This document shows positions 1,620 through 56,297 of a stretch of DNA of 64,000 bases, piece after piece (the first letter of the stretch is position 1; every line of letters starts with the position of its first letter). The stretch covers positions 186,001-250,000 of IMG/VR virus record IMGVR_UViG_3300028840_001395; one strand, 5' to 3'. The translations under genes and the position numbers were made by a program. The notes under the pieces are model-generated. The model saw only the letters and a program-made list of their open reading frames with translations, did not search any database and was not told the origin of the DNA.

Positions 1620-1648
1620 AGACTACTCCGAAGGCAGGTCCGATAAGC
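1620..1648 (-). promoter_or_regulatory. Phage motif promoter copy 1
   Basis: GCTTAT-N17-TAGTCT followed by GTGGAGG RBS and ATG. Confidence 0.8.
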
Positions 1649-1651
1649 CCC

Positions 1652-1930
1652 CTACTTGATGCCCTTGAGCGCCTCACGCGCCTGCTCCTGGCATCTCCGC
1701 AACGCCTGGATGGCGAAGGTCCCGTCACTGGCCTTGACCAGATCGTCCTCTCGGGCGATCTCCTGAAGGGCATCTCGCATCTTCTCGTACTGCCGGGCCT
1801 GAATCCAGCGGCCCATGCCCGGCTTGGCCCGTGCCTTCTGCTCCTCGGGAGTCAGCGCACCGAACTTCGCAGTCCCCCAGTTGCAGTCTGCGACCCAGTA
1901 GTTCCACAGGACTCGGAGCCAGTAGCGCAT
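1652..1930 (-). CDS. Hypothetical protein
   Basis: MRYWLRVLWNY...; coupled to the upstream gene by TGATG. Confidence 0.65.
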   Translation of the reverse strand: MRYWLRVLWNYWVADCNWGTAKFGALTPEEQKARAKPGMGRWIQARQYEKMRDALQEIAREDDLVKASDGTFAIQALRRCQEQAREALKGIK

Positions 1931-2118
1931 CACTTCACCCTGTTGGGGCCGAGCAGCTTGCCGATGAGCCTCTCGGTCTTCTCGTCCAGCGTCCCTGGCT
2001 CGTCCTCGTAGAGCAGCCCGGCCAGACCCCGGAGCAGATTCTGCTTCTCCTCGGGGGTCATCCACTTGACCCTGGCCCGGAGCCGGGCGGATGCCTTCTT
2101 CTTGGGCTTCTCGGCCAT
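1930..2118 (-). CDS. Small hypothetical protein
   Basis: MAEKPKKKASA...; TGATG coupling at both ends. Confidence 0.6.
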   Translation of the reverse strand: MAEKPKKKASARLRARVKWMTPEEKQNLLRGLAGLLYEDEPGTLDEKTERLIGKLLGPNRVK

Positions 2119-2618
2119 CAGACCTTGCCCTTCCCGGCCCGCTTGAGTTCCTCGAACTGCTCGACCGTTAGGTCGGTGTTGTCCCACCCTCTCTCCGCAC
2201 AGTAGTCCCGGATGAAGTCGGTGCGCTCCTGCTGGACTTCCTCGCGGGTCTTGAAGTGTCGGGCCTCGGGCGGGTGAGCAAGCTCCTCGTCAGTCGGGTC
2301 GGCCTCTCCACAGCCGAGCTTCATCACCTTGAGCTTCTCCGAGGTCGGCACCTCGTCCCGATGGTAGGCGAGGTAGTGGATGCAGAGGGAGTTGGTCTCC
2401 AGGCCGTTGGGGAGCACGTAGTCGCACGAGGAACTGGGGATGTCACAGCCGGTCTTGTCGCAGCCGGTGCAGCCGTGGAACCCGAGCCACTGGGTTCCCA
2501 TCTCGGCCTGGCGCAACGCTGCCGCCATCTTGCGGGTCAGGCCGTCGATCACAGGCATGTCGGACGGGGGTTGCTGGGGTTCGATGTACAGGACGTGCTG
2601 GTCGTCGGTGTTGATCAC
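2118..2618 (-). CDS. Cys/His-containing hypothetical protein
   Basis: GTG start INTDDQ...; HGCTGC and CIHYLAYHR motifs. Confidence 0.7.
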   Translation of the reverse strand: MINTDDQHVLYIEPQQPPSDMPVIDGLTRKMAAALRQAEMGTQWLGFHGCTGCDKTGCDIPSSSCDYVLPNGLETNSLCIHYLAYHRDEVPTSEKLKVMKLGCGEADPTDEELAHPPEARHFKTREEVQQERTDFIRDYCAERGWDNTDLTVEQFEELKRAGKGKV

Positions 2619-2974
2619 GGGCCACCCCCGATCCCGTCCTTCTGGCGCATCTCCTTGATGTCCACCCAGCGGACGTGCTGACCACACGCGATGCAGTTGT
2701 CGAACTCCAGCAACTGGTAGGGCGGATTCTGGTTGCGAGACACCAGGAACAGACCGTCCTCGCAGAACGGACACTCGACCTTCCAGTCCGACTCGTCCGA
2801 GATCCTCTCCTGGTTGGCGTGCCGGAGGTCGATCACGTTCTCCCCAGCCATGCGCTCCCGGACGGCCTCGTCGGACATATCCACCGGCTCCGGCCCCTGC
2901 TGGTTGGGTTCTGGCTCCACGTCGCTGTTCGCGGGCGCACCGAGGGGCCAGTCGTCGTATCCTCGACCGCTCAT
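2615..2974 (-). CDS. Zn-ribbon hypothetical protein
   Basis: CPFC...CIAC motif pair. Confidence 0.7.
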   Translation of the reverse strand: MSGRGYDDWPLGAPANSDVEPEPNQQGPEPVDMSDEAVRERMAGENVIDLRHANQERISDESDWKVECPFCEDGLFLVSRNQNPPYQLLEFDNCIACGQHVRWVDIKEMRQKDGIGGGP

Positions 2975-3342
2975 CTCCGCCTCCCCGCACCGTCCTTGCC
3001 ATAGTGCTCTACACAGAAGTCGCACTCGTTGGAGCCGCCGTAGTTCTCATCCTCCAACACCTGCTCCGTGAGCCGGTCGAACCACTTCCGAAGGGCGTGC
3101 TCGGGCTGTCGCCGGAACCGAGAGTGCTTGCCTCCCGTCATGTAGCCGTAGCCCGCGATAGACAGACCCCGCATCACGCCGAACGCTTCGGCGTAGTAGC
3201 CGTCCTGCACCCGGAAGGTGATCTTGGTCGTGTCGTCGCCCCGGTTGCGGAGACAGTCCCGGCTCGCGTGCAAGAGCATCTTGACCTCGGTCTCGACCTT
3301 CTTGACCAACCTGGGTGGAATGTCCTTGTACTTGAAGGCCAT
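2971..3342 (-). CDS. Hypothetical protein
   Basis: ORF with RBS, overlapping its neighbour; C-terminal CDFC. Confidence 0.7.
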   Translation of the reverse strand: MAFKYKDIPPRLVKKVETEVKMLLHASRDCLRNRGDDTTKITFRVQDGYYAEAFGVMRGLSIAGYGYMTGGKHSRFRRQPEHALRKWFDRLTEQVLEDENYGGSNECDFCVEHYGKDGAGRRR

Positions 3343-3345
3343 CGG

Positions 3346-3702
3346 CTACCTCCCGTGTTCCTTCTCGAAAGCATCCATCTCTTCGGGCGTCGGTGGCTTG
3401 TCCCGCCACTCGTTGAACAGCGTCGAGGGACAGCCCATCCCGATACCACCCATGTCCGCCTTGGCCTGCTCTTTCTCTCGCCCCTCGGGCATGGACTCCA
3501 GGATCTCGCACCACCACCGCTCATCGTGGTACACGAGGAACTTGCACCGACCGTAGGTAGCCCCGTGGCGGTAGCCCTCCATGCAGGGCTGCGTGTAGCA
3601 GCACCATCCGCAGCCCACACAGGGCTGGATGGGGATGCCGTCTATTGATCCAAGAGGCGCTTCGGGGGAAGGCCCTCGGAAGCCCGTGTCGTGGTCGTCC
3701 AC
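3346..3702 (-). CDS. Cys-rich protein (CxxCxxCC; YkgJ-like Fe-S/Zn candidate), start uncertain
   Basis: CVGCGWCC...C...C...C pattern; no clear ATG immediately before the Cys cluster. Confidence 0.5.
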   Translation of the reverse strand: MDDHDTGFRGPSPEAPLGSIDGIPIQPCVGCGWCCYTQPCMEGYRHGATYGRCKFLVYHDERWWCEILESMPEGREKEQAKADMGGIGMGCPSTLFNEWRDKPPTPEEMDAFEKEHGR

Positions 3703-3866
3703 AACAGGCGAGTCGGGTGCAGTGTCGGGAACCTCTCGCACAGGGCGAGCAGACGCCCCAACAGTTCCGGCTTCCAGTCCGAGGTATCCTCCGGGAATCG
3801 GTGGATGACGTTGCCCTTCTTGTTCAGGATGAGGATCTCGTCCTCGGGGAACAGCTTGTCGAGCAT
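3642..3866 (-). CDS. Small hypothetical protein
   Basis: ORF with RBS (GAGAGAAAG) and ATG. Confidence 0.5.
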   Translation of the reverse strand: MLDKLFPEDEILILNKKGNVIHRFPEDTSDWKPELLGRLLALCERFPTLHPTRLLWTTTTRASEGLPPKRLLDQ

Positions 3867-3935
3867 GGTCTTTCTCTCCCACAGCAGCCGCTCCCATAGC
3901 TGGCTGCTCTGATTCAGTTCTGCTTCAACTTCCAG

Positions 3936-5071: not shown

Positions 5072-5305
5072 TTACCTCCGCAGGTTGGCTGCCTGGGCGA
5101 CGAGCCTGTCCGTAGCATCCTGCTTGGACTCGAACGGAAAAGAGTCCGAATGCGTCGGGATCATGTTCCACGTCGCCGCCCACTTCTTCGTCCTGGGGTG
5201 ACGGGACACGATACCGATGAACTCGCTCCCCCGGAACACGTCATGGGCCTCGACGCCCTGGGCGTCCACCTCGATGCGGAGCTTGAACGTCAACTTGCCG
5301 GGCAT
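5072..5305 (-). CDS. Small hypothetical protein
   Basis: MPGKLTFKLR...; coupled to the upstream gene. Confidence 0.6.
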   Translation of the reverse strand: MPGKLTFKLRIEVDAQGVEAHDVFRGSEFIGIVSRHPRTKKWAATWNMIPTHSDSFPFESKQDATDRLVAQAANLRR

Positions 5306-5799
5306 CACGATCTCCGAACCTCGGAGCCATCGGGCAGGATGACGATCACCTTGCGTGCCCCGCCCGGCGGCTTCTTCCCCAGCTCGCCCGCCGAATACCG
5401 CACCGTGGCCCACGTCCCACCGCCCCGCTTCTGCTTGGGTTCCTCCATCTCCTTCGGACAGGCGATGACCCACACCGACTCGTCCGCGATGTCGTGGTCA
5501 CGGGCCAGGAACTTCTTCGGAGGACGTTCCTCGACCGCGTGGCGGCACTCGGCCCGGAGGTCACGAACGAGCGGCGGGTGGAGAACCACGTCACCGCCGA
5601 AGGCCAGGACGAGCGTGTGGAACTCGGCGTCCGCACCCTCGCAGTCGCCGTGGTGACCCCGGATCGTCCGGTGGTTGAAAGGCTCGACGGAGCCGTCCGG
5701 GGAGCCGCCCGCCGCCATGCGCTGGAAGATCGCTCCCAGCGTGCGAAGCTGGGCCGCAGTGCAGCCCTGGCGAGTCCCGGTGAAACCAATGTCGATCAC
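5305..5799 (-). CDS. SLOG-superfamily (YspA/DprA-like Rossmann fold) protein
   Basis: IGFTGTRQG, HHGDCEGADAEFH, RDHDIADES and GTWATVRY segments typical of SLOG proteins. Confidence 0.7.
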   Translation of the reverse strand: MIDIGFTGTRQGCTAAQLRTLGAIFQRMAAGGSPDGSVEPFNHRTIRGHHGDCEGADAEFHTLVLAFGGDVVLHPPLVRDLRAECRHAVEERPPKKFLARDHDIADESVWVIACPKEMEEPKQKRGGGTWATVRYSAGELGKKPPGGARKVIVILPDGSEVRRS

Positions 5800-5814: not shown

Positions 5815-5843
5815 AGACTACTCTGTCGGAAGGAGAAATAAGC
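5815..5843 (-). promoter_or_regulatory. Phage motif promoter copy 2
   Basis: GCTTAT-N17-TAGTCT then AGGTGGAGG RBS. Confidence 0.8.
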
Positions 5844-5849
5844 CCCAAG

Positions 5850-6147
5850 AAATGACGAAGCCCGCGCCTGGCGAGTCTTCCGGGGGTCGGAAGAGAGCCT
5901 GCTTGCGCGGGTCTCCGTAGCACCGGCATATCCAGAGAAGTCCAGATATGCCCGGCAGTGCCCTACCGGAGGGCAGTTTGTCTCATCCGGACTGCCCTCG
6001 CACCGACCCCCAGGCGTGTACGACCTCTCGCTCTAGCCTGGGGGCCTAGAACCGTGGGCCGGGACTTGCTAGAACCAGCGACCTCCGTGCAAAAGTAAGG
6101 CACCCTTCGATGAGGTGGGGGTTGGCAGCCCTTCACCTCGTGTGCTT
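5850..6147 (-). ncRNA. Putative structured ncRNA B (~300 nt), class unknown
   Basis: No credible ORF; own TAGTAT-type promoter without RBS; chain of stems (GAGGTG/CACCTC, CCCCCAGGC/GCCTGGGGG, GAGGGCAGT/ACTGCCCTC, CATATC/GATATG, TCTTCCG/CGGAAGA, CCCGCGC/GCGCGGG) ending in TTTCTT. Confidence 0.55.
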
Positions 6148-6154
6148 GACGCCT

Positions 6155-6184
6155 ATACTACTCTGTCCTGACAGAAAAGTAAGC
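6155..6184 (-). promoter_or_regulatory. Phage motif promoter copy 3 (TAGTAT variant, no RBS)
   Basis: GCTTAC-N18-TAGTAT. Confidence 0.75.
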
Positions 6185-6186
6185 CC

Positions 6187-6461
6187 AAGAAAACGCGATG
6201 CCCGCCGTGGTGGGCCTTCACTCAGGAGGGGTTGACGACAGGGAACCGACCACGCTCACGTCGGGAGCCTGCCGCCAGGAAGCCTCCGGCGAGGGAACCT
6301 GGGCGGGCACCGAGGGATGGTTTTGTTTAGGGGGTCATCCACCCCCTCATCAAACGTCGCGCCTCATGGCGCTTTTGAGAATACAATCTTCGGCCTAGAC
6401 CCCCACCTCCATGTCCTGCGGCACCCCGCAAGGCCCCACAGGCGGTCAACCTGGTGGGGCT
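6187..6461 (-). ncRNA. Putative structured ncRNA A (~270 nt), class unknown
   Basis: No credible ORF; own TAGTAT-type promoter; stems GCCCCAC/GTGGGGC, GCGCC/GGCGC, AGGGGGT/ACCCCCT, long-range TGCCCGCC/GGCGGGCA; loop GGTTGAC complementary to distal GTCAACC. Confidence 0.55.
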
Positions 6462-6467: not shown

Positions 6468-6497
6468 ATACTACTCTGAAACCGCTGCGATGTAAGC
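6468..6497 (-). promoter_or_regulatory. Phage motif promoter copy 4 (TAGTAT variant, no RBS)
   Basis: GCTTAC-N18-TAGTAT. Confidence 0.75.
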
Positions 6498-8731: not shown

Positions 8732-9334
8732 CTACGCTGCCCGCTTCGCTTCGCGGGCCTTGCGCTCGGCCTCCATCTTGGCGATCCGCTGGGCCTTGGT
8801 CATGCCGCCCTGGGTCACGTCGATGTGATCCTCGATGGCCTGCCAGTTGGGCTCCTCGCCACGCAAGTCCACGATGTTGAACAGGGTGACCACCCCGTCG
8901 AGCCACGCGCTGATGTGCATCTGACCCTTGCGGTCGATGGCGTACACGTACTCGATGTCACCCTCGATGTTGTCCTGGGTGATACGCCAGTCGTCCCGCT
9001 CGTTGCGGTCGCCGTGGCAGAAGCACTGCGGGGAACGTGCCCACAGGCGATGGGCCTCGGGGTCGTCCTTCTCGCTGACGAAGTTCCGGTAGCCGATCTC
9101 CAGGTTGAAGTCGGCCACGGGCTCGTCCGGGAGCGAGCTGAGGATGCTGCTCCACCCTCCCTTGTGCTCATTGATCAGCAGCCGGAGCATCGCCATGTGG
9201 TCGCCCTTGAAGTGACCGTGACAGAGGTGCCAGAGCGCCTTGCCCAGCCCCGTGGGGTAGGCGTCGTAGTGGTGGTAGCGCCCGGAGAAGCCCCCCTTCG
9301 GGGTCACGCGAGCAATGCAGCCTCTCGTACTCAT
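8732..9334 (-). CDS. Phage hypothetical protein (MSTR...YHHYDAYPTGLG type)
   Basis: ORF downstream of a motif promoter and RBS; N-terminal pattern recurs in phage proteins. Confidence 0.75.
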   Translation of the reverse strand: MSTRGCIARVTPKGGFSGRYHHYDAYPTGLGKALWHLCHGHFKGDHMAMLRLLINEHKGGWSSILSSLPDEPVADFNLEIGYRNFVSEKDDPEAHRLWARSPQCFCHGDRNERDDWRITQDNIEGDIEYVYAIDRKGQMHISAWLDGVVTLFNIVDLRGEEPNWQAIEDHIDVTQGGMTKAQRIAKMEAERKAREAKRAA

Positions 9335-9350: not shown

Positions 9351-9379
9351 AGACTACTCTGTGGTCACCACAAGTAAGA
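9351..9379 (-). promoter_or_regulatory. Phage motif promoter copy 5
   Basis: TCTTAC-N17-TAGTCT then AGGTGGAGG. Confidence 0.8.
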
Positions 9380-9771: not shown

Positions 9772-10265
9772 GTCAGATCCTCCCGGAAGGCGTCGATCCA
9801 CCCCGCGACCTTGTTCTTGAACCTCTGACACCGCTTGGAGTAGTGGCGCGGGAAGCGGAAGTAGGCAAGCTGCTGAGCTAGCTCATCCCAGTACGAAGCC
9901 GGGGGAAGTCGCTCGTCGTGCCAGACATTCTTCTCCCGCAGCCGGATGGCGATGCCGATGCGACGCTCCGAGATGTAGTTGACACCGACGCCTCCACCGG
10001 GATGCGGGCGGCGCTTGTGCTCGATGACCTTGACGGGCAGGTCGAAGAACTCGGCAGCGGCGAGCCCCGCTTCCTGTAGCTCCATCAGGATGCCCACGTC
10101 GGCGGGATGGGCCTCACCGATCTTGCCGTCGCCGGTCTTCCAGTCGCCTTCCTTCATCCTGCGGAGCAGGTCGTGACAGGGCTTGCACCAGCCTTTCGTC
10201 CCCGATGCGGAGAGGCGGGCCAGCTTCTTGATGCCGCTGCTACCGCAGTTCTCGCAGTAGGCCAT
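9768..10265 (-). CDS. Hypothetical protein with N-terminal Zn finger
   Basis: MAYCENC...WCKPC; TGATG coupling. Confidence 0.7.
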   Translation of the reverse strand: MAYCENCGSSGIKKLARLSASGTKGWCKPCHDLLRRMKEGDWKTGDGKIGEAHPADVGILMELQEAGLAAAEFFDLPVKVIEHKRRPHPGGGVGVNYISERRIGIAIRLREKNVWHDERLPPASYWDELAQQLAYFRFPRHYSKRCQRFKNKVAGWIDAFREDLT

Positions 10266-11005
10266 CAGTACCAGCCCCCCGCAGTCCCGAAGGAGCGGTA
10301 GCCCTGGCGGCGCAGGGAGCGGTCGAGGCGGCGACGCGCCTTGGTCGCGGCGGCGCTGAACTCCATCGTGACGTAGGAGCCGCCACCGCCCTCGTAGTGC
10401 TTGCACTCGTCGCGGTTGTACTCGTCGTTGCCGACGATCTGGCCCCCGCTGCCCCGCGTCCACTCGATCCGGCGCAGGGCGGCGAACAGCTTCTTGGCGA
10501 ACCAGTGGTCGCGGGCGTTCTCGACCGCGTGGTTGTTCTCGGGCACGTCCCACTCGACCGTGCGCCCCTTGTTGCGGAAGTGGACGCTGGCGTCGGGCAG
10601 GTGGATGTCCGCGTCCTTGGACACGGGCTTGAGATCGAGGGCCAACTTCTTCGGCGTCACCAGCTTGGTCCGGTCGTAGGCCCCCGGCCCGAGCTTGGGG
10701 TCGAAGACGAACAGCAAGCGGCGCATCGTGTCGAACCGCTCGCGGACCTCGTCGCTGGGGCACTCCCAACCCCACGACCGCAGAGTGAAGCCGCAGTGCC
10801 GGTAGAGCGCGGCCTTCTGCTCCTGGAAGCGCTTGTCCCCGCGCTTGCCCTTGGCGGCGGCGCGGAGCTTCGGCACGAGCGCCTTGGCCTCCGCGAGGAT
10901 CCCCTCCTGCTTGGCGTTCCACGCCGCGAGCAGACCCTTGCGGAACGTCGCCCACTCCTTCGCGGGAATCGTGATCGTCCCGCTCTCCCAGCAGTACTTG
11001 GACAT
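10265..11005 (-). CDS. Hypothetical protein (246 aa)
   Basis: Downstream of a motif promoter and AGGAGG RBS. Confidence 0.8.
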   Translation of the reverse strand: MSKYCWESGTITIPAKEWATFRKGLLAAWNAKQEGILAEAKALVPKLRAAAKGKRGDKRFQEQKAALYRHCGFTLRSWGWECPSDEVRERFDTMRRLLFVFDPKLGPGAYDRTKLVTPKKLALDLKPVSKDADIHLPDASVHFRNKGRTVEWDVPENNHAVENARDHWFAKKLFAALRRIEWTRGSGGQIVGNDEYNRDECKHYEGGGGSYVTMEFSAAATKARRRLDRSLRRQGYRSFGTAGGWY

Positions 11006-11023: not shown

Positions 11024-11052
11024 AGACTACTCTGTCAGCGACGGAAATAAGC
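11024..11052 (-). promoter_or_regulatory. Phage motif promoter copy 6
   Basis: GCTTAT-N17-TAGTCT. Confidence 0.8.
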
Positions 11053-11460: not shown

Positions 11461-11489
11461 AGACTACTCTGGGCCGGGGCGAAATAAGA
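11461..11489 (-). promoter_or_regulatory. Phage motif promoter copy 7 (left arm of divergent pair)
   Basis: TCTTAT-N17-TAGTCT. Confidence 0.8.
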
Positions 11490-11557: not shown

Positions 11558-11586
11558 TCTTATCTTGAGTCCCGACAGAGTAGTCT
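11558..11586 (+). promoter_or_regulatory. Phage motif promoter copy 8 (right arm of divergent pair)
   Basis: TCTTAT-N17-TAGTCT then AGGTGAGGAG. Confidence 0.8.
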
Positions 11587-11607: not shown

Positions 11608-12114
11608 ATGAACACTCACGAAGCCTACGCCGAGGAAATCCGCCGAGGTGTCTGGGCCGACCCGAACCCCGACCGCTGCGGCTGCAAAGGAACCGGCCTG
11701 TGGGTGTCGGACTTCGACAGCTACCACGAGTGCCCGTTCCACGGCGACCCCGACATCCCCGACCCCGAGTGGGATGACGAGACCCACGGTCCCTGCACCT
11801 TCGACTGGGACGCCCACGAGCGCCGCATCTGCGTGGATGCCTACCGGCACTTCCGCGATCAGGCCGTCGAACTGGGCCTCTCCGCCGAGGTCTTCGAGGC
11901 CATCTGCCGCCGCGACCTGGGAGCGGGCGAGCACACCCCCCGCGAGTGGGTGAACGCCGCCAACGCCGCCGCCGAGGAGCTGGCCCACACCCTGGAGGAA
12001 GCCAACGCCCGCGCCGAGGGCTTCTCCTGCGCCCTGGAGCGCCGCCTCGAAGAGGAGTACGAGATCGAGATGCAGGAGTACGAGGAAGAAGTCCGAGCCA
12101 CGGGTATCCGATAG
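11608..12114 (+). CDS. Acidic Cys/His hypothetical protein
   Basis: ORF after promoter and RBS; CGC...CPFH. Confidence 0.75.
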   Translation: MNTHEAYAEEIRRGVWADPNPDRCGCKGTGLWVSDFDSYHECPFHGDPDIPDPEWDDETHGPCTFDWDAHERRICVDAYRHFRDQAVELGLSAEVFEAICRRDLGAGEHTPREWVNAANAAAEELAHTLEEANARAEGFSCALERRLEEEYEIEMQEYEEEVRATGIR

Positions 12115-12117: not shown

Positions 12118-12146
12118 GCTTACTTCCGGCCCGGTGAGAGTAGTCT
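12118..12146 (+). promoter_or_regulatory. Phage motif promoter copy 9 (ligase N-half)
   Basis: GCTTAC-N17-TAGTCT then GGAGG. Confidence 0.8.
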
Positions 12147-12162: not shown

Positions 12163-13302
12163 ATGGCCAAGTCCAAGATCGAGAAGCTCGCGGCCCTGAT
12201 CGCCAAGGCCAAGGACGCGTACTACAACGGGAAACCCATCATGGGTGACCCCGAGTATGACGCGCTCGAAGACGAGCTGCGGAAGCTCGACCCGAGCAAC
12301 CCCGTCCTGGCGATGGTCGGTGCAGACCCGACCGGGAGCGGCTGGCCCAAGGTCAAGCACGAGATCCCGATGGGGTCGCTCCGCAAGGCCCAGGACTCCG
12401 ACGACATGGACAAGTGGTTCTCGACGCAGAGCGTCAACACGCCGGTCTGTGTCTCCGACAAGCTCGACGGCATCAGCATCGGCCTGCGCTACGAGAAAGG
12501 CAAGCTCGTCCAGGGCTTGACGCGGGGCGACGGCGACACGGGTGAGGACATCACCAGGAACGTCATGCTGATGCAGGGCGCGGTCAAGGTGCTCCCCAAG
12601 ACGGTCAAGGGCAAGCCCCTCCCCGACGTGGTGTACGTGCGGGGCGAGGTGGTGGTCAAGAAGTCCGACTTCGCCGCCAACTTCAAGGGCGACTCCAACC
12701 CGAGGAACACCGCGAGCGGGACGGCCAAGCGCCAGAGTGACCCGAGCAAGTGCAAGCACCTGACCATCCTCGCGTACCAGTGGCTCCCGGACGGCATGGC
12801 CCCGGAGTTCAAGTGCGACGAGTTCCACGCGCTGGTCGAGGCCGGGTTCCAAACCGCCAACTTCAAGGTCTGCAAGAACGCGGCCCAGGTACAGGCCTTC
12901 TACCAGGAGTACGTGGACAAGACCCGCGACTCCCTGGACTACCTGATCGACGGGCTCGTGGTGGACATCGATGACCGGGACGTGCGCGAGGGCAAGGGCA
13001 CCACGGACGGTCGGCCCAAGGGCGCGGTGGCCTACAAGTTCCCGCACGAGAAGAAGCCGACCACGCTCCGGAACATCCGCTGGCAGGTGGGCAACTCGGG
13101 GCGCATCACCCCGGTCGCAGAGTTCGACACCGTGAACCTGGCGGGCGCGAACGTGAGCCAGGCCAGCCTCCACACGGTCGAGCGTGTCAAGAAGTTGAAA
13201 TTGTTCAAGGGATGCCGTATCCTGGTGTCGCGGCGAAATGATGTGATTCCAATGGTGGAGGCAAACCTGGATGAAAACATCAACATCAGCGACTTCGAGT
13301 AG
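12163..13302 (+). CDS. ligA: NAD-dependent DNA ligase, N-terminal half (Ia, adenylation and OB domains)
   Basis: YYNG...DPEYD, KLDG adenylation motif, LTRGDGDTGEDIT, RGEV, DGLVV, AVAYKF, WQVGNSGRITPVA, RNDVIP; stops before the Zn finger. Confidence 0.93.
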   Translation: MAKSKIEKLAALIAKAKDAYYNGKPIMGDPEYDALEDELRKLDPSNPVLAMVGADPTGSGWPKVKHEIPMGSLRKAQDSDDMDKWFSTQSVNTPVCVSDKLDGISIGLRYEKGKLVQGLTRGDGDTGEDITRNVMLMQGAVKVLPKTVKGKPLPDVVYVRGEVVVKKSDFAANFKGDSNPRNTASGTAKRQSDPSKCKHLTILAYQWLPDGMAPEFKCDEFHALVEAGFQTANFKVCKNAAQVQAFYQEYVDKTRDSLDYLIDGLVVDIDDRDVREGKGTTDGRPKGAVAYKFPHEKKPTTLRNIRWQVGNSGRITPVAEFDTVNLAGANVSQASLHTVERVKKLKLFKGCRILVSRRNDVIPMVEANLDENINISDFE

Positions 13303-14098
13303 CTATCTGGTATGCCCCGTCTGCCAGCGTAAGATGCGGTCTATCACCACACAGCACATCAAGAAGCATGGCTTTGAGGATGCGAAGTCATTCAAGAGAC
13401 ACTTCGGACTAGATTCTCTCAAGTGTGATGAGATGCGAGGACGCCAGTCCAAGTTCATGTCGTCACACAACCCCACCGCAGGGAATGGACACACCCCAAC
13501 GTCCATCAAGAAGATGAGGGAACGACGCAAGGGGAAAGGACTCGGTGTGGCCGGGAAGTACGAGAGGACTCCCGAGATACGCCTCAAGATATCGAAGGGT
13601 GTCACCCGAGCATGGGAAAAGGGGAAGAGAGGAAGAGGATGGTACGTTTACGGTCGCAAGGCTGAAAAGAAGGTATGGGTTCGGTCTTCCTGGGAAGAAC
13701 GGGTGGTGAGAGTCTTGGACTCCCATCCCTGTGTCCTTCGGTATGAGGTAGAACCCTTCCAGATTCCTTACTGGCATAACGGAAATCCGCATCGATACAC
13801 CCCTGACTTCTTGGTGATGTTGGAGGGTAACATCAAGGAACTGTGGGAGGTGAAACCACAGGAACTCCTGAATTTGCACCGTAATCCTTCCAAGATTGCT
13901 GCCTTGAATGAGTTTGCGGTAGATCACGGCATCAACACCAGGGTGGTTACTCTTGAGCACATAGAGGGGATGGAGAGACAGGTGGGAATCCAGCCGTGGA
14001 CGGGGGCTGGAGGGCCGTGGGTGAAACCGGATGACCCTGACTTCCGACCCCGAAGCCCCCGAGAACAAAAGGGCTTATCTGACGACTCAGTGGAGTAG
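13271..14098 (+). mobile_element. Free-standing homing-endonuclease-like gene (Zn finger + NUMOD3-like repeats + TnsA-N-like PD-(D/E)XK nuclease) inserted in ligA
   Basis: CPVC...H..HG; HTPTSIKKMRE and RTPEIRLKISK; RSSWE...YEVEPFQIPY...YTPDFLV...EVKP; visibly A/T-richer than flanks; GGAGG RBS inside the ligase 3' end. Confidence 0.8.
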
Positions 14099-14101
14099 TC
14101 T
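14073..14101 (+). promoter_or_regulatory. Phage motif promoter copy 10 (drives ligase C-half; overlaps endonuclease stop)
   Basis: GCTTAT-N17-TAGTCT then GAAGGAG and ATG; the TAG of the -10 box is the endonuclease stop codon. Confidence 0.8.
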
Positions 14102-14115
14102 AGGTGAAGGAGAAG

Positions 14116-14946
14116 ATGATGACCGTGTCAGCAGCGAGAGAGTATTTTGAAGCACCGACCCTCTGCCCCTCCTGCGGGGGCCAGCTCAAGCGGGACGGCG
14201 AGTACCTCATCTGCCCGAACACCGATGGCTGCGAGGCCCAGGCGACCGGCGCTATCAAGCGCTGGTGCAAGAAGATCGACGTGAAGCACGTCGGGGAGAG
14301 CCTCATCGTGGTGCTGGTCGAGGAGGGGCTGGTCAAGGACATCGCAGACCTGTACACGCTCGACCCCGCCGAGGTCGAGAACCTGACGATGGGCGACCGC
14401 CGGGTGGGCGGTACGGGTCGCAAGGCCGTGACCAACCTGCGGAACAAGATGGCCCTCCCGCTGCACGTCTTCGTCGGGAGTCTCGGCATCCCGCTCATCG
14501 GGCGCAGCATGGCCAAGACCATCGTGGACGGCGGTTTCGACAGCCTCTCGAAGATGCTCAAGGCCAAGATCTCCGAGGTCGCCGCCATCCCCGGCGTCGG
14601 CCAGAGCAAGGCCGACAGCTTCGTCAAGGGCTTCACCGCCAAGGCCGGGCTGGTCGCCAAGCTCATCTCGGTCGGCATCGTGGTGCAGAGCGCCACCGGG
14701 CCGCTCAAGGGCAAGGTCTTTTGCCTCACGGGCTTCCGCGACAGCGACCTGACCGAGGCCATCGAGCGGGCGGGTGGCACGGTCAAGTCCAGCGTGAGCA
14801 AGAAGCTGACGCACCTGGTGCTCAAGGATCCGTCCTCGACTTCGGGCAAGGCGAAGAAGGCCCGCGACTACAACAAGCAGGGCGTGGCCGACATCGAACT
14901 GATAGACCCGGACGAGGCGTGGGATCTCGCGGGAGGTCGTCCGTGA
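14116..14946 (+). CDS. ligA: NAD-dependent DNA ligase, C-terminal half (Zn finger, HhH repeats, BRCT)
   Basis: PTLCPSCG...CPNTDGC, IDVKHVGES, SLGIPLIG, IPGVG, LKGKVFCLTG...GGTVKSSVSKKLTHLV. Confidence 0.92.
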   Translation: MMTVSAAREYFEAPTLCPSCGGQLKRDGEYLICPNTDGCEAQATGAIKRWCKKIDVKHVGESLIVVLVEEGLVKDIADLYTLDPAEVENLTMGDRRVGGTGRKAVTNLRNKMALPLHVFVGSLGIPLIGRSMAKTIVDGGFDSLSKMLKAKISEVAAIPGVGQSKADSFVKGFTAKAGLVAKLISVGIVVQSATGPLKGKVFCLTGFRDSDLTEAIERAGGTVKSSVSKKLTHLVLKDPSSTSGKAKKARDYNKQGVADIELIDPDEAWDLAGGRP

Positions 14947-15433: not shown

Positions 15434-15744
15434 TGGGCCTCTACCTGCACCCGCCGGGCTTCCTCCCCGAATGGCTCAAGGAGAACGCCATCGAGATCAC
15501 CCGACAGGATGTTCTCGACGCCGACCTGACGGACGAAGATACGCTCCCCGTCTGTCTCGTCCCCAATCCCTACGCCGAGGGTGTGTGGGCCGCAGGGGTC
15601 ATCTACGACGACATCGAGCGCGCGGAGTTCACACGGGAGGATGACCCGCGACCGAAGACCTGGTGGTTGCTCGAAGTGGAGAAGATCAAGGAGTTCGCGG
15701 GGGAAGTCCACCGGCTTACCAGGCGGGGTCCCCGAGTAGTCTAG
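15433..15744 (+). CDS. Hypothetical protein
   Basis: MGLYLHPPG...; TGATG coupling. Confidence 0.65.
   Translation: MGLYLHPPGFLPEWLKENAIEITRQDVLDADLTDEDTLPVCLVPNPYAEGVWAAGVIYDDIERAEFTREDDPRPKTWWLLEVEKIKEFAGEVHRLTRRGPRVV
15714..15742 (+). promoter_or_regulatory. Phage motif promoter copy 11
   Basis: GCTTAC-N17-TAGTCT then GAGGAGG. Confidence 0.8.
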
Positions 15745-15758: not shown

Positions 15759-16382
15759 ATGCCAACCCTGAAACGCGAGTGGATCAAGGTAGCCGACCTG
15801 CCGGGCGCTCCGTTCCGGGGAGCCTTCCCGGACTACAAGGCGAAGCTCCTGCCCGTGCAGGCCGGGCAGACCATCCGTGTGCCGAAGGACACCAAGCTGT
15901 TCCGCATGAAGACCGGCGCGTTCCTGTCCAAGCGCACCTACCGGGTCAAGGTCGATCACGTCCTGACCGGATCCGACATGACCCACCTGGGCCACAAGAA
16001 CCGCGTGACCAATCCGCAGCCCCGCTGGCCCGGCTCCGGTGGCTACTGGACCGAGGCCGACATCAATGACGTGGAGGTCGAGGGCGCGTGGGTCTGGTGC
16101 CAGCCCTGGATCGAGCGTGAGCGTGGGTGGGGGGTTCGCCCGGACGGGTACACGCTCCACACGGACAAGGACGGGGCCAAGCGGATGCTCGCCAAGATGC
16201 GGAAGCGTGAGGCCAGCGAAGGCTACAGCGCCGCGAACGTACCGGACGAGTACTCCGAGCCTTCGGGCAAGCCCTACCGCTGCTTCATCACCGACCCCGC
16301 CGAGCTGGCTGCCATCGAGAAGGCCAAGGACGGCGTGTGGGGCAAGAACGGCAACACGACCCCGCCGGAGTGGAGGGACTAG
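15759..16382 (+). CDS. Hypothetical protein
   Basis: MPTLKREW...; promoter and RBS. Confidence 0.75.
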   Translation: MPTLKREWIKVADLPGAPFRGAFPDYKAKLLPVQAGQTIRVPKDTKLFRMKTGAFLSKRTYRVKVDHVLTGSDMTHLGHKNRVTNPQPRWPGSGGYWTEADINDVEVEGAWVWCQPWIERERGWGVRPDGYTLHTDKDGAKRMLAKMRKREASEGYSAANVPDEYSEPSGKPYRCFITDPAELAAIEKAKDGVWGKNGNTTPPEWRD

Positions 16383-16762: not shown

Positions 16763-16791
16763 GCTTATTTCTCCCCGCGACAGAGTAGTCT
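16763..16791 (+). promoter_or_regulatory. Phage motif promoter copy 12 (PARP gene)
   Basis: GCTTAT-N17-TAGTCT. Confidence 0.8.
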
Positions 16792-19116: not shown

Positions 19117-19408
19117 CCCTGGCTGGCACAACATCCCCAGGCCGCAGAAGATGATCGCGGTCGGTCTGGTGCTCATCGGGCTGTCCCTCGTCTGGTTCGG
19201 CCACCTCACCCCCCTTGGAGACAAGGGACAGAGCCTCGGTACCGACCTGATGCTGTTCGCGGGCATCTACGGGCTAGTGCATGAGCTGGCTGCCACGAAG
19301 AAGCGGCTCCGCAACATCCAACAGGTCATCAAGACCGAGAACGTGAACGTCGCCTGCCAGACGGTCAACATGATAGAGGGGGGCTTGTCGGAGCCTCCAA
19401 AGGAGTAG
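19097..19408 (+). CDS. Two-helix membrane protein
   Basis: Two hydrophobic segments. Confidence 0.6.
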   Translation: MQDFTDSPGWHNIPRPQKMIAVGLVLIGLSLVWFGHLTPLGDKGQSLGTDLMLFAGIYGLVHELAATKKRLRNIQQVIKTENVNVACQTVNMIEGGLSEPPKE

Positions 19409-19411
19409 TCT
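19383..19411 (+). promoter_or_regulatory. Phage motif promoter copy 13 (variant -35)
   Basis: GCTTGT-N17-TAGTCT; the -10 TAG is the upstream stop codon. Confidence 0.7.
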
Positions 19412-44065: not shown

Positions 44066-44094
44066 AGACTACTCTGTCACCGACCGGGATAAGC
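44066..44094 (-). promoter_or_regulatory. Phage motif promoter copy 14
   Basis: GCTTAT-N17-TAGTCT. Confidence 0.8.
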
Positions 44095-44340: not shown

Positions 44341-44369
44341 AGACTACTCTGGGCCAGAGAGAAATAAGA
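44341..44369 (-). promoter_or_regulatory. Phage motif promoter copy 15 (left arm of divergent pair)
   Basis: TCTTAT-N17-TAGTCT. Confidence 0.8.
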
Positions 44370-44411: not shown

Positions 44412-44440
44412 TCTTATCTCGGGCTGCAGGGGAGTAGTCT
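44412..44440 (+). promoter_or_regulatory. Phage motif promoter copy 16 (right arm of divergent pair)
   Basis: TCTTAT-N17-TAGTCT. Confidence 0.8.
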
Positions 44441-44458: not shown

Positions 44459-44968
44459 ATGACGATGAGCTGGGATGACGACTGGGATGAGTGGGACGAG
44501 GCCGGTGACTTTCACTGGGTCAAGTGCTCCCACTGCGGGTGGTCGGGCAAGACGGATGGCGACCCCGAGTGTGGCTGCTACGACCGTCACGGCGAGTCCG
44601 AGCCCCGTGAGCCGGACGAGTCCTGCGAGTGCGGGGCGTGCCGGTGGGAGGACATCGAGTACAACCCGACCTGCACCGAGTGCGGGACGGGGCCGCTCAC
44701 CGAGGGCATCTACCGCACCTCGACCCACACGGCCCGCAAGCACTTCTACGCGGGTTCCCCCAACATCGAGATCCGCCCCGGCGACCGCTACCGCAAGACG
44801 GTCAGCCGGGACTTCTACCCCGGTGGGGCGTGGGGTCCCTGGCACCTCCACCGGAAACGCATCTCCAAGGGCTGGGGCTGGGCCGACCAGCACACGGTCG
44901 AGCCGAAGCCCTCGGGCTGGGACGAGCAACGGGCGTGGGACGGACACCCGCTCGGAGATTCCGCATGA
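44459..44968 (+). CDS. Cys-rich hypothetical protein
   Basis: CSHC, CGC, CECGAC, CTEC; GAGGAGG RBS. Confidence 0.7.
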   Translation: MTMSWDDDWDEWDEAGDFHWVKCSHCGWSGKTDGDPECGCYDRHGESEPREPDESCECGACRWEDIEYNPTCTECGTGPLTEGIYRTSTHTARKHFYAGSPNIEIRPGDRYRKTVSRDFYPGGAWGPWHLHRKRISKGWGWADQHTVEPKPSGWDEQRAWDGHPLGDSA

Positions 44969-51293: not shown

Positions 51294-51322
51294 AGACTAC
51301 TCTGTCGAACCCCGAAGTAAGA
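51294..51322 (-). promoter_or_regulatory. Phage motif promoter copy 17 (back-to-back pair)
   Basis: TCTTAC-N17-TAGTCT. Confidence 0.8.
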
Positions 51323-51327: not shown

Positions 51328-51356
51328 GCTTACTCGCGTGCGGAATGGAGTAGTCT
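51328..51356 (+). promoter_or_regulatory. Phage motif promoter copy 18 (back-to-back pair)
   Basis: GCTTAC-N17-TAGTCT. Confidence 0.8.
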
Positions 51357-51373: not shown

Positions 51374-52240
51374 ATGCCCAAGTATGGCAACATCCCGACC
51401 CGGCTCAAGGTGTTCCTGCGGGCGGCTATCCAGTTCAAGCGGCCCCACGGGGACGCAGTGCAGTGCTGTCCGGCCTTCGTGACCGACCTGGACAGGCCCA
51501 AGACCCACGACACCGCCCGCCGATGGGCGGGTCGTGCCCAGTACAACCCCTCCTACGCGGTGGTCTACCCGAACACCAAGGTCGAGGGATTGGGGCAGGA
51601 CAACAAGCCCATCCCCAGCGTCACGTTGGTCGGTACGGACGCCCGGCAAGAGGGTGGCTTCGCCTTCAAGGTGGTGACCCCGGAGGGCTGGCTCGTGGAC
51701 CTCCGCAAGGAGGAGTTCTACGAGGTGCTGTTCAAGAAGGGCATCCCCAAGTCCGGCAAGATGGTGGGGCCGTTCCAGTGGGTCGTCAACGGCAGCCAGA
51801 TGCGGCTCACGCTGGTCGGGTCGAGGCTCTACAAGGAGATCGAGGAACTGTCCAAGATCCGCAAGAAGCCTCGGAAGGGCAAGCTCGGGATTCGTGACCT
51901 CGAAGTCGGGGGAGTCTACACGAGCCAGGGTGGCAACAACTACGGATGCGATGCCGTCTTCCTGGGCCGTGCCCGCTTCGACGGCAAGCTCAAGTGCGCC
52001 TGGGTCTACGTCGCCGGGCACTACAGCTCGGTAGCCGGGTATCAGACGGCCTACCAGCGGGCGCTCAAGGAGGGGTGGAATCGGCCCGTTGTGGTCCTGA
52101 CCAGCGGTTGCTCCTACACGGAGTGCGTTGGTAAGGTGGATCTGAAGCCGAACCCGCGTGAGTCTCCGATGACGGAGCACGTCGAGTTCCAGGACGGCTA
52201 CGGGACGAAGCTGTATCGCCCCCGAGTGACGGAGTGGTAG
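51374..52240 (+). CDS. Hypothetical protein (~288 aa)
   Basis: Promoter and GGAGG RBS; FKVVTPEGWLVDLR...F.WV..GSQMRL. Confidence 0.75.
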   Translation: MPKYGNIPTRLKVFLRAAIQFKRPHGDAVQCCPAFVTDLDRPKTHDTARRWAGRAQYNPSYAVVYPNTKVEGLGQDNKPIPSVTLVGTDARQEGGFAFKVVTPEGWLVDLRKEEFYEVLFKKGIPKSGKMVGPFQWVVNGSQMRLTLVGSRLYKEIEELSKIRKKPRKGKLGIRDLEVGGVYTSQGGNNYGCDAVFLGRARFDGKLKCAWVYVAGHYSSVAGYQTAYQRALKEGWNRPVVVLTSGCSYTECVGKVDLKPNPRESPMTEHVEFQDGYGTKLYRPRVTEW

Positions 52241-55256: not shown

Positions 55257-55385
55257 CTCACGTTCCTCCTGAAACACGAATAGCGTTAGTCCTTCGAGGG
55301 AACCAACGCTACTAGGAGGACCGCGAGCCTATGGCGGGTGTCGGCCCTACGTGAAGCTGGTGTAGTAGTTCTTCATCACGCCCCC

Positions 55386-55414
55386 ATAGTAGGGGCCTTC
55401 TGGCCCCGTGTCAA
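55386..55414 (-). promoter_or_regulatory. Host sigma70-type promoter
   Basis: TTGACA-N17-TACTAT, near-consensus. Confidence 0.75.
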
Positions 55415-55929
55415 GATCCTTCTCCGCCTTCCATGACCGCCAGCATCGACCGGAACGTCGCCCCATCGTCCGTGGGGCCAGGAACGAGAACCTCTTTCCA
55501 GTTCGAGCCTATCTGCTTGATGACCCCCAACCGGAACTTGATGATGGCCTTGGCCTCGACCTGGCGGATGCGCTCACGGGTCAGGTTGAACAGCTCACCC
55601 ACCTTCTCCAAGGTGAGGCCATCTGGATTCCTCTCGGCCACGTCGAGGACACAGCTCTCCCCTCCGATGTGCTCTCCCGCTTCGACCTCGGGGAAGTTCG
55701 GCATGATGGAGCCAGCGTGGCTCACGTCGAGGTAGAGGTTGTACTTGCAGGTGACGTAGGGACAGGGCCGAACCCCGTGCCTGCAATGCGCCCGGAGACG
55801 GGGGAGATGACGGGGTGTCCTCGGCCCCTGGAGAGGTTCTTCGTTGTTGACCGGGATGGTCTTCTTGAACTTGCGTTTCGGGTTCATCTCGGGATCGATC
55901 TGAAGTGCTGTGGCTCCTTCTTCCATCAC
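55411..55929 (-). CDS. Stand-alone sigma-70 region 4 HTH protein with Cys-containing N-terminal domain
   Basis: LTLEKVGELFNLTRERIRQVEAKAI (sigma region 4.2); RPCPYVTCKYNLYLDV...CVLDVAE; no sigma region 2. Confidence 0.85.
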   Translation of the reverse strand: MMEEGATALQIDPEMNPKRKFKKTIPVNNEEPLQGPRTPRHLPRLRAHCRHGVRPCPYVTCKYNLYLDVSHAGSIMPNFPEVEAGEHIGGESCVLDVAERNPDGLTLEKVGELFNLTRERIRQVEAKAIIKFRLGVIKQIGSNWKEVLVPGPTDDGATFRSMLAVMEGGEGS

Positions 55930-55942
55930 TTCCTCACGTTCA

Positions 55943-56033
55943 TGGTCGCTCCGACAGGAATCGAACCTGCGATGCGGGTGTCACCCCGAGCGGATTTAGA
56001 GTCCGCCTCCTTCGACCACTCGGACACGGAGCG
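55943..56033 (-). tRNA. Amber-suppressor tRNA (anticodon CUA), class II, encoded CCA
   Basis: CGCTCCG/CGGAGCG acceptor + A73 + CCA; D arm TCC-GAGTGGTCGAA-GGA; GCGGA-CTCTAAA-TCCGC; 19-nt variable arm; GCAGG-TTCGATT-CCTGT. Confidence 0.9.
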
Positions 56034-56043
56034 ATTGAAGTGT

Positions 56044-56258
56044 GGCGCGTGACAGGAGTCGAACCTGCATAACCCTCCCCACAAGGGGGAAGGCAAAGAA
56101 GAGGCCAGGCCTGGTCAAGAGAGGGGCCTGCGACATCCACGCCGAGCGGGCCTAGCAGGCCCGTGTCCCGACTCATCCCATCTGCATGGCGATCCACCAT
56201 GCGTGCCCTTCTTCTCCCCCGGTTAAAGCGGGGGGCCTCACCGTTGGGCTACACGCGC
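56044..56258 (-). tRNA. Ochre-anticodon (UUA) tRNA-Gln-like RNA with 148-nt insertion in the variable region
   Basis: GCGCGTG/CACGCGC acceptor; GCC-CAACGGTGA-GGC D arm; CCCCG-CTTTAAC-CGGGG anticodon arm; GCAGG-TTCGACT-CCTGT T arm; no canonical encoded CCA (C73-ACA). Confidence 0.65.
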
Positions 56259-56268
56259 ACTGTCCTCT

Positions 56269-56297
56269 ATACTACTCTCTAAGGCGGGAGGATAAGC
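56269..56297 (-). promoter_or_regulatory. Phage motif promoter copy 19 (TAGTAT variant, tRNA operon)
   Basis: GCTTAT-N17-TAGTAT, 10 nt upstream of the first tRNA base. Confidence 0.8.

What the first reader, a model, noticed from the sequence alone, without database searches (positions are those of the whole stretch)
1620..56297. Nineteen-copy bipartite promoter motif with a non-canonical -35 (G/T)CTTAY and GAG-TAGT(C/A)T -10, and a candidate cognate sigma4-only protein
Seen: 19 copies on both strands, spacer 17 (18 in two), always oriented toward a downstream RBS/gene or RNA, including three divergent pairs; often embedded in the 3' end of the upstream gene. The -10 fits TANNNT but the -35 is not TTGACA. 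The window encodes a protein with only sigma region 4 (55411-55929), itself downstream of copy 19. Known: region 4 reads -35 elements; T4 AsiA/MotA remodel sigma70 region 4. Inference: host sigma region 2 plus a phage-supplied region 4, or a phage sigma/RNAP encoded outside this window, defines this regulon.
Basis: partly seen in the sequence, partly recalled or inferred. Interest (0 to 1): 0.72.

Follow-up and report, generated by a model that had tools for sequence, protein, structure and literature searches.

The report
Huge-phage promoter family, probably phage-sigma driven

Summary
The window holds 18 exact copies of (G/T)CTTAY-N17/18-TAGT(C/A)T plus one variant (GCTTGT), against 0.01 expected. 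The complete 435,804-bp phage genome holds 56 exact and 3-4 degenerate copies. 56 of 62 AGTAGTNT sites carry CTTAY at the right spacing, and 38 of the 56 copies have an RBS, start codon and ORF within 45 nt. Others precede tRNA arrays, a tmRNA and two suppressor tRNAs. The genome has no RNA polymerase, AsiA or MotA.

It also has a few canonical TTGACA/TAnnnT promoters, one of them before a 382-aa gene (genome 63762-64910). That protein's predicted fold matches sigma regions 2 to 4.

A 536-kb relative has 121 copies of a sister motif, CTTAC-N17-TAGATR, and a 40%-identical copy of that gene. That protein's DNA-reading helix (TRERIRQ) is the one primary sigmas use to read TTGACA, and its gene lies downstream of copy 19.

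Best reading: a phage-specific promoter class served by host core polymerase and a phage sigma. This is a new member of a known kind. No transcript data exist, so the promoter function and the sigma assignment are inferred.

The parts
1620..1648 (-). promoter copy 1 (GCTTAT-N17-TAGTCT); start codon 16 nt after the -10 (gene 887-1603)
5815..5843 (-). promoter copy 2; gene 5305-5799
6155..6184 (-). promoter copy 3 (18-bp spacer, TAGTAT); faces about 300 nt with no RBS-led ORF and no Rfam match
6468..6497 (-). promoter copy 4 (18-bp spacer, TAGTAT); faces about 270 nt with no RBS-led ORF and no Rfam match
9351..9379 (-). promoter copy 5; gene 8732-9334
11024..11052 (-). promoter copy 6; gene 10265-11005
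11461..11489 (-). promoter copy 7 (divergent pair with copy 8); 57-aa gene
11558..11586 (+). promoter copy 8; gene 11608-12114
12118..12146 (+). promoter copy 9; NAD-dependent DNA ligase adenylation and OB domains (12163-13302)
14073..14101 (+). promoter copy 10; its TAG is the stop codon of the upstream gene; drives the HhH+BRCT gene 14104-14946
15714..15742 (+). promoter copy 11; overlaps the end of the upstream gene; gene 15759-16382
16763..16791 (+). promoter copy 12; PARP-catalytic-domain protein 16813-18489
19383..19411 (+). promoter copy 13, variant -35 (GCTTGT); ATG at 19454
44066..44094 (-). promoter copy 14
44341..44369 (-). promoter copy 15 (divergent pair with copy 16)
44412..44440 (+). 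promoter copy 16; gene 44465-44968
51294..51322 (-). promoter copy 17 (back-to-back divergent pair with copy 18; conserved in relative L032)
51328..51356 (+). promoter copy 18; gene 51374-52240
56269..56297 (-). promoter copy 19 (TAGTAT); drives two suppressor-type tRNAs and then the sigma-4-only gene; syntenic copy in L032, and a copy before the homologous gene in L030
56044..56258 (-). tRNA-like gene with anticodon loop CUUUAAC (anticodon UUA, ochre type by my reading of the alignment) and an insert of about 145 nt after the anticodon arm; 28.2 bits, just under Rfam's 29-bit cut-off
55946..56033 (-). class-II tRNA with anticodon CUA (amber-suppressor type)
A product of the regulon, not its likely reader

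Best explanation
The motif is a phage-specific promoter class of a complete 436-kb phage that encodes no RNA polymerase of its own. Host core RNA polymerase is redirected to about 60 sites, 19 of them in this window, by a phage-encoded sigma-70-family protein. The best candidate is the 382-aa protein at genome 63762-64910 (+), outside the window. It has an N-terminal winged-helix domain followed by sigma region 2 to region 4.

That gene sits behind a canonical host-type promoter (TTGACT, a 16-bp spacer ending in TGG, then TATTGT). The proposed order of events is this. Host primary sigma transcribes a few early genes, including the phage sigma. The phage sigma then turns on the GG(G/T)CTTAY-N14-GAGTAGTCT promoters. 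These drive short operons of small genes, the DNA ligase, a PARP-like protein, tRNA arrays, the tmRNA and the suppressor tRNAs.

Shown: the motif, its statistics, its position and orientation, its conservation in relatives, the absence of a phage RNA polymerase, and the sigma-like fold.
Inferred: promoter activity, timing, and which protein reads the motif.
For: Motif statistics and placement. It precedes the tmRNA by 23 nt and a tRNA by 18 nt.

No phage RNA polymerase: no DFDGD-type motif in six frames, and no PF00940, PF00623 or PF00562.

Canonical TTGACA-N16-18-TAnnnT sites are present in intergenic DNA: 9 against 2.5 expected, with a maximum of 6 in 50 shuffles. One lies before the 382-aa gene, and others sit in tandem with motif copies before tRNA arrays. 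The host primary sigma therefore appears to read the usual consensus, and the motif is a second class.

The 382-aa protein:
- AF2 model with pLDDT 83.
- All top-50 Foldseek hits are sigma factors.
- Residues 136-382 align collinearly with sigma70 370-608 and SigA, at Z 8-9.5. The C-terminal domain matches the SigL sigma-4 domain, 79 of 80 residues at 4.2 A.
- TIGR02937 spans residues 180-371, though at E 0.006, below the cut-off.
- Language-model neighbours are phage and ECF sigmas.

Comparative evidence:
- Relative G001 (536 kb, 52% GC) has 121 copies of RGRCTTACTTY-N9-WGCG-TAGATR. The -35 block and spacing are the same and the -10 differs. It has a 40%-identical homologue behind a conserved TTGACT-N16(TGG)-TAAAGT promoter.
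- Relative LR745208.1 has a quite different dominant motif (CTAAAAAKT-N9-CGTGCCGATAGGG) and only a very divergent homologue, 62 bits over the sigma-2 part. This protein therefore co-varies with the promoter.
- The other sigma-like core gene, the tandem-sigma-4 protein, has identical recognition helices in all three genomes.
- The G001 -10 block lacks the T at the last hexamer position in 110 of 121 copies, which argues against host primary sigma region 2 as the common reader.
- The motif core also occurs in a 45%-GC relative (L030) and a 60%-GC one (L032). That spread is hard to reconcile with a single host sigma.
Against: There are no transcript data. No RNA run holds this sequence, so no start site is mapped.

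The sigma assignment rests on three genomes and on a predicted fold with middling Z-scores for a helical protein. Sequence matches to sigma families are below the curated cut-offs.

The region-4 recognition helix of the 382-aa protein differs between G000 (VSRNRAAT) and G001 (VSPFRAAA), yet both promoters share CTTAY.

The protein-DNA complex prediction was not run by the tool.

The host is unknown, so a host alternative sigma cannot be excluded.
Confidence: 0.55

Rival explanations
1. Sigma appropriation. Host primary sigma region 2 reads TAGTCT as a TAnnnT -10. A phage DNA-binding activator occupies (G/T)CTTAY in place of sigma region 4, as T4 MotA and AsiA do. The tandem-sigma-4 protein (genome 31416-31949) would be the obvious activator candidate.
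For: TAGTCT fits TAnnnT in this genome. The phage encodes a strongly conserved protein with two sigma-4-type HTH domains, behind a near-perfect host-type promoter, GTGACA-N17-TATAAT. The -35 block CTTAY is conserved between G000 and G001, as are that protein's recognition helices.
Against: No AsiA or MotA homologue is detected. The box sits at the canonical 17-bp spacing, not 12-13 bp as for MotA boxes (established knowledge of T4 middle promoters). The sister motif in G001 ends in TAGATR and lacks the final T that primary sigma needs. LR745208.1 has the same tandem-sigma-4 recognition helices but a different -35 block. The tandem-sigma-4 gene is paired with a NusG-like gene in all three genomes, which points more toward elongation or late control.
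Confidence: 0.15
2. A host alternative sigma factor (group 3 or ECF type) recognises the motif, and the phage simply exploits it.
For: The geometry CTTAY-N14-G(A/C)GTAG resembles the SigB/SigF/FliA-type layout (GTTTAA-N12-15-GGGTAT; TAAA-N15-GCCGATAA; from my knowledge of those consensus sequences). The relative LR745208.1 uses a near-textbook FliA-type motif. The host is unknown.
Against: The motif core persists in relatives of 45%, 52%, 60% and 62% GC, which probably infect different hosts. The -10 half changes between phages along with a phage gene. All these phages carry their own sigma-like genes behind host-type promoters. Copy-to-copy conservation is far tighter than is usual for host promoters.
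Confidence: 0.12
3. One reading: the protein at 55411-55929 supplies a region 4 that reads (G/T)CTTAY.
For: It has a genuine region-4.2-type HTH (Pfam PF04545, 28.5 bits). Its close homologues in L030 and L032 also lie next to a motif copy.
Against: Its recognition helix TRERIRQ is identical to that of TTGACA-reading primary sigmas and is invariant across phage and bacterial homologues. It is absent from G001, which has 121 sister promoters, and from LR745208.1. It is transcribed from copy 19 itself, behind two tRNAs.
Confidence: 0.05
4. The repeat is not a promoter. It would be another cis element, such as a recombination or shuffling cassette, a replication or packaging signal, or an RNA processing site.
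For: Near-identical 45-bp cassettes at gene boundaries could promote modular exchange, as proposed for the promoter-stem-loop cassettes of T4-type phages (from my knowledge). No transcript data exist.
Against: It has strict orientation toward the downstream gene, a fixed distance to RBS and start codon, a two-block layout with a 17-bp spacer, and placement before the tmRNA and tRNA genes. A shuffling role would not exclude promoter function.
Confidence: 0.03

Closest known systems
Bacillus phage SPO1 middle promoters read by phage sigma gp28 (and similar phage-sigma systems)
   Same: The phage has no polymerase of its own. Host sigma transcribes early genes, including a phage sigma. That sigma then redirects host core to many highly conserved promoters whose -35 and -10 blocks differ from the host consensus.
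   Different: There is no detectable sequence relationship. The consensus is different (GGKCTTAY / GAGTAGTCT). The candidate sigma carries an extra N-terminal winged-helix domain, whose homologues match Pfam Mrr_N. Nothing here has been tested experimentally.
T4 middle promoters (MotA box plus AsiA-remodelled sigma70)
   Same: A -10 block that fits TAnnnT, combined with a non-TTGACA upstream box that contains GCTT.
   Different: The box lies 17 bp from the -10, not 12-13 bp. No AsiA or MotA homologue is found. The sister motif in G001 does not keep a sigma70-type -10.
FliA/sigma-28 and SigB/SigF-type (group 3) promoters
   Same: A short upstream block, about 14-15 bp of spacer, then a G-rich -10 beginning GnG or GCC. 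The relative LR745208.1 has CTAAAAAKT-N9-CGTGCCGATA, essentially the FliA consensus.
   Different: The sequence in this genome (CTTAY ... GAGTAGTCT) matches no described host consensus that I know of. No FliA-family gene reaches a Pfam cut-off in the phage.
'Minimal' single-HTH sigma factors of jumbo phages without RNA polymerase (Iyer et al. 2021, PMC7824862)
   Same: The protein at 55411-55929 is a small phage protein whose only recognisable domain is a sigma region-4 HTH.
   Different: It has a conserved four-Cys module ahead of the HTH. It belongs to a family of over 3000 members that is also common in bacteria. It keeps the primary-sigma recognition helix, so it does not fit the role of reader of this motif.

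Membership tests
Bacterial sigma-70-type bipartite promoter | Two conserved blocks separated by 17 +/- 1 bp, oriented toward a gene | tested here: met
   52 of 56 copies have a 17-bp spacer and 4 have 18 bp. All point at a downstream gene, tRNA or tmRNA.
Bacterial sigma-70-type bipartite promoter | -10 hexamer of the form TAnnnT | tested here: inconclusive
   Met in this genome (TAGTCT or TAGTAT). The homologous motif in G001 is TAGATR, with T at the last position in only 11 of 121 copies.
Bacterial sigma-70-type bipartite promoter | -35 hexamer resembling TTGACA | tested here: not met
   (G/T)CTTAY shares at most 1-2 positions with TTGACA. True TTGACA promoters exist elsewhere in the genome.
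Bacterial sigma-70-type bipartite promoter | Transcription starts 6-9 nt downstream of the -10 | not testable with these tools
   No RNA run holds the sequence.
Phage-encoded sigma regulon (SPO1 gp28 type) | The phage lacks its own RNA polymerase | tested here: met
   The genome is complete, with terminal repeats. No DFDGD motif and no PF00940, PF00623 or PF00562.
Phage-encoded sigma regulon (SPO1 gp28 type) | The phage encodes a sigma-70-family protein with regions 2 and 4 | tested here: inconclusive
   Fold level: all top hits are sigma factors, collinear from sigma-2 to sigma-4, Z 8-9.5. Sequence level: below the cut-offs (PF08281 E 0.006; TIGR02937 E 0.006).
Phage-encoded sigma regulon (SPO1 gp28 type) | The sigma gene is expressed from a host-type promoter | tested here: met
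   TTGACT-N16(TGG)-TATTGT lies upstream in G000 and TTGACT-N16(TGG)-TAAAGT in G001. This is sequence evidence only.
Phage-encoded sigma regulon (SPO1 gp28 type) | The sigma binds host core polymerase and initiates at the motif | not testable with these tools
T4 MotA/AsiA sigma appropriation | AsiA-type anti-sigma and MotA-type activator are present | tested here: not met
   PF09010 and PF09158 find nothing at E <= 1.
T4 MotA/AsiA sigma appropriation | Activator box centred near -30, 12-13 bp from the -10 | tested here: not met
   The spacer is 17 or 18 bp in all copies.
   TRERIRQ is identical to RpoD/SigA region 4.2 and invariant in the family.
   Absent from G001 (121 sister promoters) and from LR745208.1, by tblastn and by family HMM. 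Present in L030 and L032.

The most novel reading that the evidence does not exclude
The 382-aa proteins would form a new sigma class specific to huge phages (winged helix, then sigma-2, then sigma-4). Its promoter specificity would have drifted from an FliA-like ancestor (CTAAA-N15-GCCGATA in LR745208.1) to CTTAY-N14-GnGTAG in this phage and in G001. That would yield naturally orthogonal sigma/promoter pairs. The Cys4 sigma-4-only protein, made from this regulon and keeping the TTGACA-reading helix, would then act as a decoy. It would occupy -35 elements or the polymerase flap to shut off host and early transcription.
Probability: 0.25. Interest if true: 0.65.

Novelty: new member of a known kind. 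Interest (0 to 1): 0.5.

Why it matters
Huge phages known only from metagenomes have almost no described regulatory logic. This work gives a complete promoter map for one of them: about 60 sites here, 121 in one relative and about 45 of a third type in another. It also gives a testable sigma candidate and a small comparative series in which the promoter and the sigma change together. If confirmed, the pairs would be ready-made orthogonal transcription parts. They would also show how a phage without its own polymerase schedules several hundred genes and about 70 tRNA and tmRNA genes. The work also corrects a plausible but wrong assignment of the sigma-4-only protein.

Tried and rejected
- Megablast of 10 kb of the window against GenBank phages found no match.
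- Two whole-IMG/VR scans for the motif found only single, chance-level hits in 14 and 21 contigs.
- Searches for RNA and DNA sequencing runs found only DNA runs (sediment, seawater, microbial mat). No RNA run holds the sequence.
- Complex prediction with three proteins plus promoter DNA was counted but not folded, so it is no evidence either way.
- The AF2 model of the sigma-4-only protein had pLDDT 53, too poor for a fold search.
- The ORF at genome 386814-387506, which has a sigma-4 match, has HNH-endonuclease motifs plus HTH repeats and is not a sigma (my reading of the sequence).
- The 491-aa ORF with a weak sigma-2 match is dominated by DUF2325, and its sigma match is E 0.11.
- The second hit to the 382-aa family (genome 99430-100290) shares only the N-terminal winged-helix part.
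- Fragments G002 and G003 carry both sigma-like genes but cover only a motif-poor region, so they were uninformative.
- A possible second motif, GGTAGA, before start codons is only weakly enriched: 31 of 191 sites, against 3-15% for control hexamers. I did not pursue it.
- The transcripts downstream of copies 3 and 4 have no Rfam match and no similarity to each other or to other promoter-proximal regions.

Full report
**Context.** The window is bases 186001-250000 of a single 435,804-bp virus record. The record has direct terminal repeats and is rated complete. It is 62% GC. The only runs that hold it are sediment, seawater, microbial-mat and estuary DNA metagenomes. A simple self-trained gene caller gave 495 genes covering 92% of the genome. 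ARAGORN finds 70 tRNA-like genes and one tmRNA.

**The observation.**
- The window holds 18 exact copies of (G/T)CTTAY-N17/18-TAGT(C/A)T. Two of them have the 18-bp spacer (6155-6184 and 6468-6497).
- One further copy has GCTTGT (19383-19411).
- Shuffles give 0.01 expected matches.
- Genome-wide there are 56 exact copies. AGAGTAGTCT is the most over-represented 10-mer in the genome.
- Of 62 AGTAGTNT sites, 56 carry CTTAY at the right distance, and most of the rest carry a one-base variant.
- Positions that were not part of the search are also fixed. GAG before TAGT is 52/52, 52/52 and 50/52. G two bases before CTTAY is 50/52. RGGTG follows the -10 block.
- All copies point at a downstream feature. 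38 of 56 have an SD, a start codon and an ORF of at least 40 codons within 45 nt, most often 13-22 nt away. Others precede the tmRNA (23 nt), a tRNA pair (18 nt), tRNA arrays, or are the upstream member of a tandem pair.

**What can read it.**
- The complete genome has no multisubunit or T7-type RNA polymerase. There is no DFDGD-like motif in six frames. PF00940, PF00623 and PF00562 find nothing, and the two multisubunit controls ring in all 14 control genomes. Host core polymerase must therefore be used.
- No AsiA or MotA is detected.
- Canonical TTGACA-N16-18-TAnnnT sites do occur in intergenic DNA: 9 against 2.5 expected, with a maximum of 6 in 50 shuffles. Several are near-perfect. Some sit directly downstream of a motif copy in front of tRNA arrays (84941+, 123871-).
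- The host's primary sigma therefore seems to read the usual consensus, and the motif is a separate class.

The protein at 55411-55929 is 171 aa counted from the ATG.
- It matches Pfam Sigma70_r4 only over residues 103-131.
- That stretch, LTLEKVGELFNLTRERIRQVEAKA, aligns with region 4.2 of RpoD/SigA. The recognition helix TRERIRQ is identical. By established structural knowledge, these are the residues that contact TTGACA.
- The family has more than 3000 members, including Myxococcota and candidate-phyla bacteria. Four Cys and LTRERIRQV are invariant across it.
- It has no homologue in G001 or LR745208.1, by tblastn or by a family HMM.
- Its gene lies downstream of copy 19, behind two tRNAs.
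Its AF2 model was too poor to use.

**Other sigma-like genes, all outside the window.**

(a) Genome 63762-64910 (+), 382 aa.
- Pfam and NCBIfam matches to sigma families are sub-threshold, though the NCBIfam match spans residues 180-371.
- Language-model neighbours are phage and ECF sigmas.
- With a 22-sequence alignment, the AF2 model has pLDDT 83.
- All top-50 Foldseek hits are sigma factors.
- A second-look alignment places residues 136-382 collinearly on sigma70 370-608 and on SigA, SigB and SigL, at Z 8-9.5. The last domain fits the SigL sigma-4 domain over 79 of 80 residues.
- The family has only about 45 members, several on contigs of 165-536 kb.
- Its upstream region carries TTGACT, a 16-bp spacer ending in TGG, then TATTGT.

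(b) Genome 31416-31949 (-), 177 aa.
- It has two sigma-4-type HTH domains in tandem.
- It lies behind GTGACA-N17-TATAAT and directly after a NusG-like gene.
- Its family is large and viral: 604 representatives.

**Relatives.**
- The Logan contigs L032 (60% GC) and L030 (45% GC) carry close homologues of the sigma-4-only gene. They also carry the motif core at syntenic places.
- The IMG/VR record G001 (536 kb, 52% GC) has 121 copies of RGRCTTACTTY-N9-WGCG-TAGATR. The -35 block and spacing are the same, the -10 differs, and only 11 of 121 copies have T in the last hexamer position.
- G001 has a 40%-identical homologue of the 382-aa protein behind TTGACT-N16(TGG)-TAAAGT, and a 71%-identical tandem-sigma-4 protein.
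- LR745208.1 (485 kb, 55% GC) lacks the motif core. Its dominant motif is GATTTCnCTAAAAAkT-N9-CGTGCCGATAGGGT before RBS and ATG, which is essentially the FliA/sigma-28 consensus.
- LR745208.1 has tandem-sigma-4 proteins with the same recognition helices as G000 and G001. It has only a very divergent homologue of the 382-aa protein.
- Across these three genomes, promoter type tracks the 382-aa family and not the tandem-sigma-4 protein.
- One point against: the region-4 helix of the 382-aa protein differs between G000 and G001 although both promoters share CTTAY.

**Distribution and timing.**
- Motif copies cluster between 84 and 320 kb, among small genes, tRNAs, the ligase and the PARP-like gene.
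- None lies between 320 and 391 kb, where a baseplate wedge gene sits.
- Only two lie in the first 84 kb, which holds the ribonucleotide reductase and a helicase.
- An early-to-middle class is a reasonable reading, but it is inferred.

**Comparison with known systems.** The logic matches phage sigma cascades such as SPO1 gp28. It differs from T4 MotA/AsiA in spacing and in lacking those proteins. The layout CTTAY-N14-GnGTAG is closer to group-3 sigma promoters than to sigma70 promoters. I found no paper describing this clade's promoters or these proteins. The only GenBank relative is an unannotated huge-phage assembly.

**Verdict.** This is a new member of a known kind, and interest is moderate.

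Noticed in passing
window 55946-56258 (-): Copy 19 drives two suppressor-type tRNAs. One has anticodon CUA. The other is a tRNA-like gene whose anticodon I read as UUA, with an insert of about 145 nt, scoring just under Rfam's cut-off. By my gene calls the genome's stop codons are TGA 287, TAG 176, TAA 32, and coding density under the standard code is 92%, so whole-genome recoding is unlikely.
   Followed up: partly
window 56776-59073 (-): The phage encodes a two-component set: a response regulator (265 aa), a PAS-HisKA-HATPase kinase (365 aa) and a single-domain response regulator (140 aa). It lies just upstream of copy 19 and of the sigma-4-only gene. The same order is kept in relatives L030 and L032.
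   Followed up: partly
window 12163-14946 (+): The NAD-dependent DNA ligase appears split. The adenylation and OB domains are in 12163-13302, and the HhH and BRCT domains are in 14104-14946. Another ORF (13271-14098) lies between them, and each part has its own motif promoter.
   Followed up: no
window 16813-18489 (+), 59096-60148 (-), 34547-38533 (-): A PARP catalytic-domain protein, a WGR-domain protein, and a 1328-aa protein with several glycosyltransferase domains and a methyltransferase domain.
   Followed up: no
window 5844-6461 (-): Copies 3 and 4 (the two with an 18-bp spacer and TAGTAT) face about 300 and 270 nt of GC-rich sequence. It has no RBS-led ORF, no Rfam match and no similarity to other promoter-proximal regions. 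These may be non-coding RNAs.
   Followed up: partly
whole genome; e.g. window 14096-14098 and 15742-15744: Upstream genes often end on a TAG that is part of the promoter, either inside TAGTCTAGG or in the TAGG just before the -35 block. This probably explains the high share of TAG stops (35%).
   Followed up: partly
genome 84.9-123 kb (outside the window): About 67 tRNA genes in arrays and a tmRNA (tag ANDEAVLQAA). Several arrays are preceded by a motif promoter in tandem with a canonical TTGACA promoter (84898/84941 plus strand; 123998/123871 minus strand).
   Followed up: partly
genome 31416-32644 (-); the same module in G001 and LR745208.1: A conserved pair of genes: a NusG-like protein (NGN and KOW domains, sub-threshold) followed by the tandem-sigma-4 protein. 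It may control elongation or late transcription of the long operons that have no motif copies.
   Followed up: partly
G001 (loci L062-L088): In the 536-kb relative, many of the 121 promoters are followed at about +10 to +35 by a G-run/C-run hairpin and then AGGAAC. This suggests a conserved 5'-leader stem-loop that this genome lacks.
   Followed up: no
genome-wide, e.g. 183251(-), 213625(+), 265885(-), 311438(-): GGTAGA, often as GGGTAGA, lies 1-60 nt before start codons more often than control hexamers do (31 of 191 sites). It has no evident -35 partner. It could be a weak second phage promoter class.
   Followed up: partly
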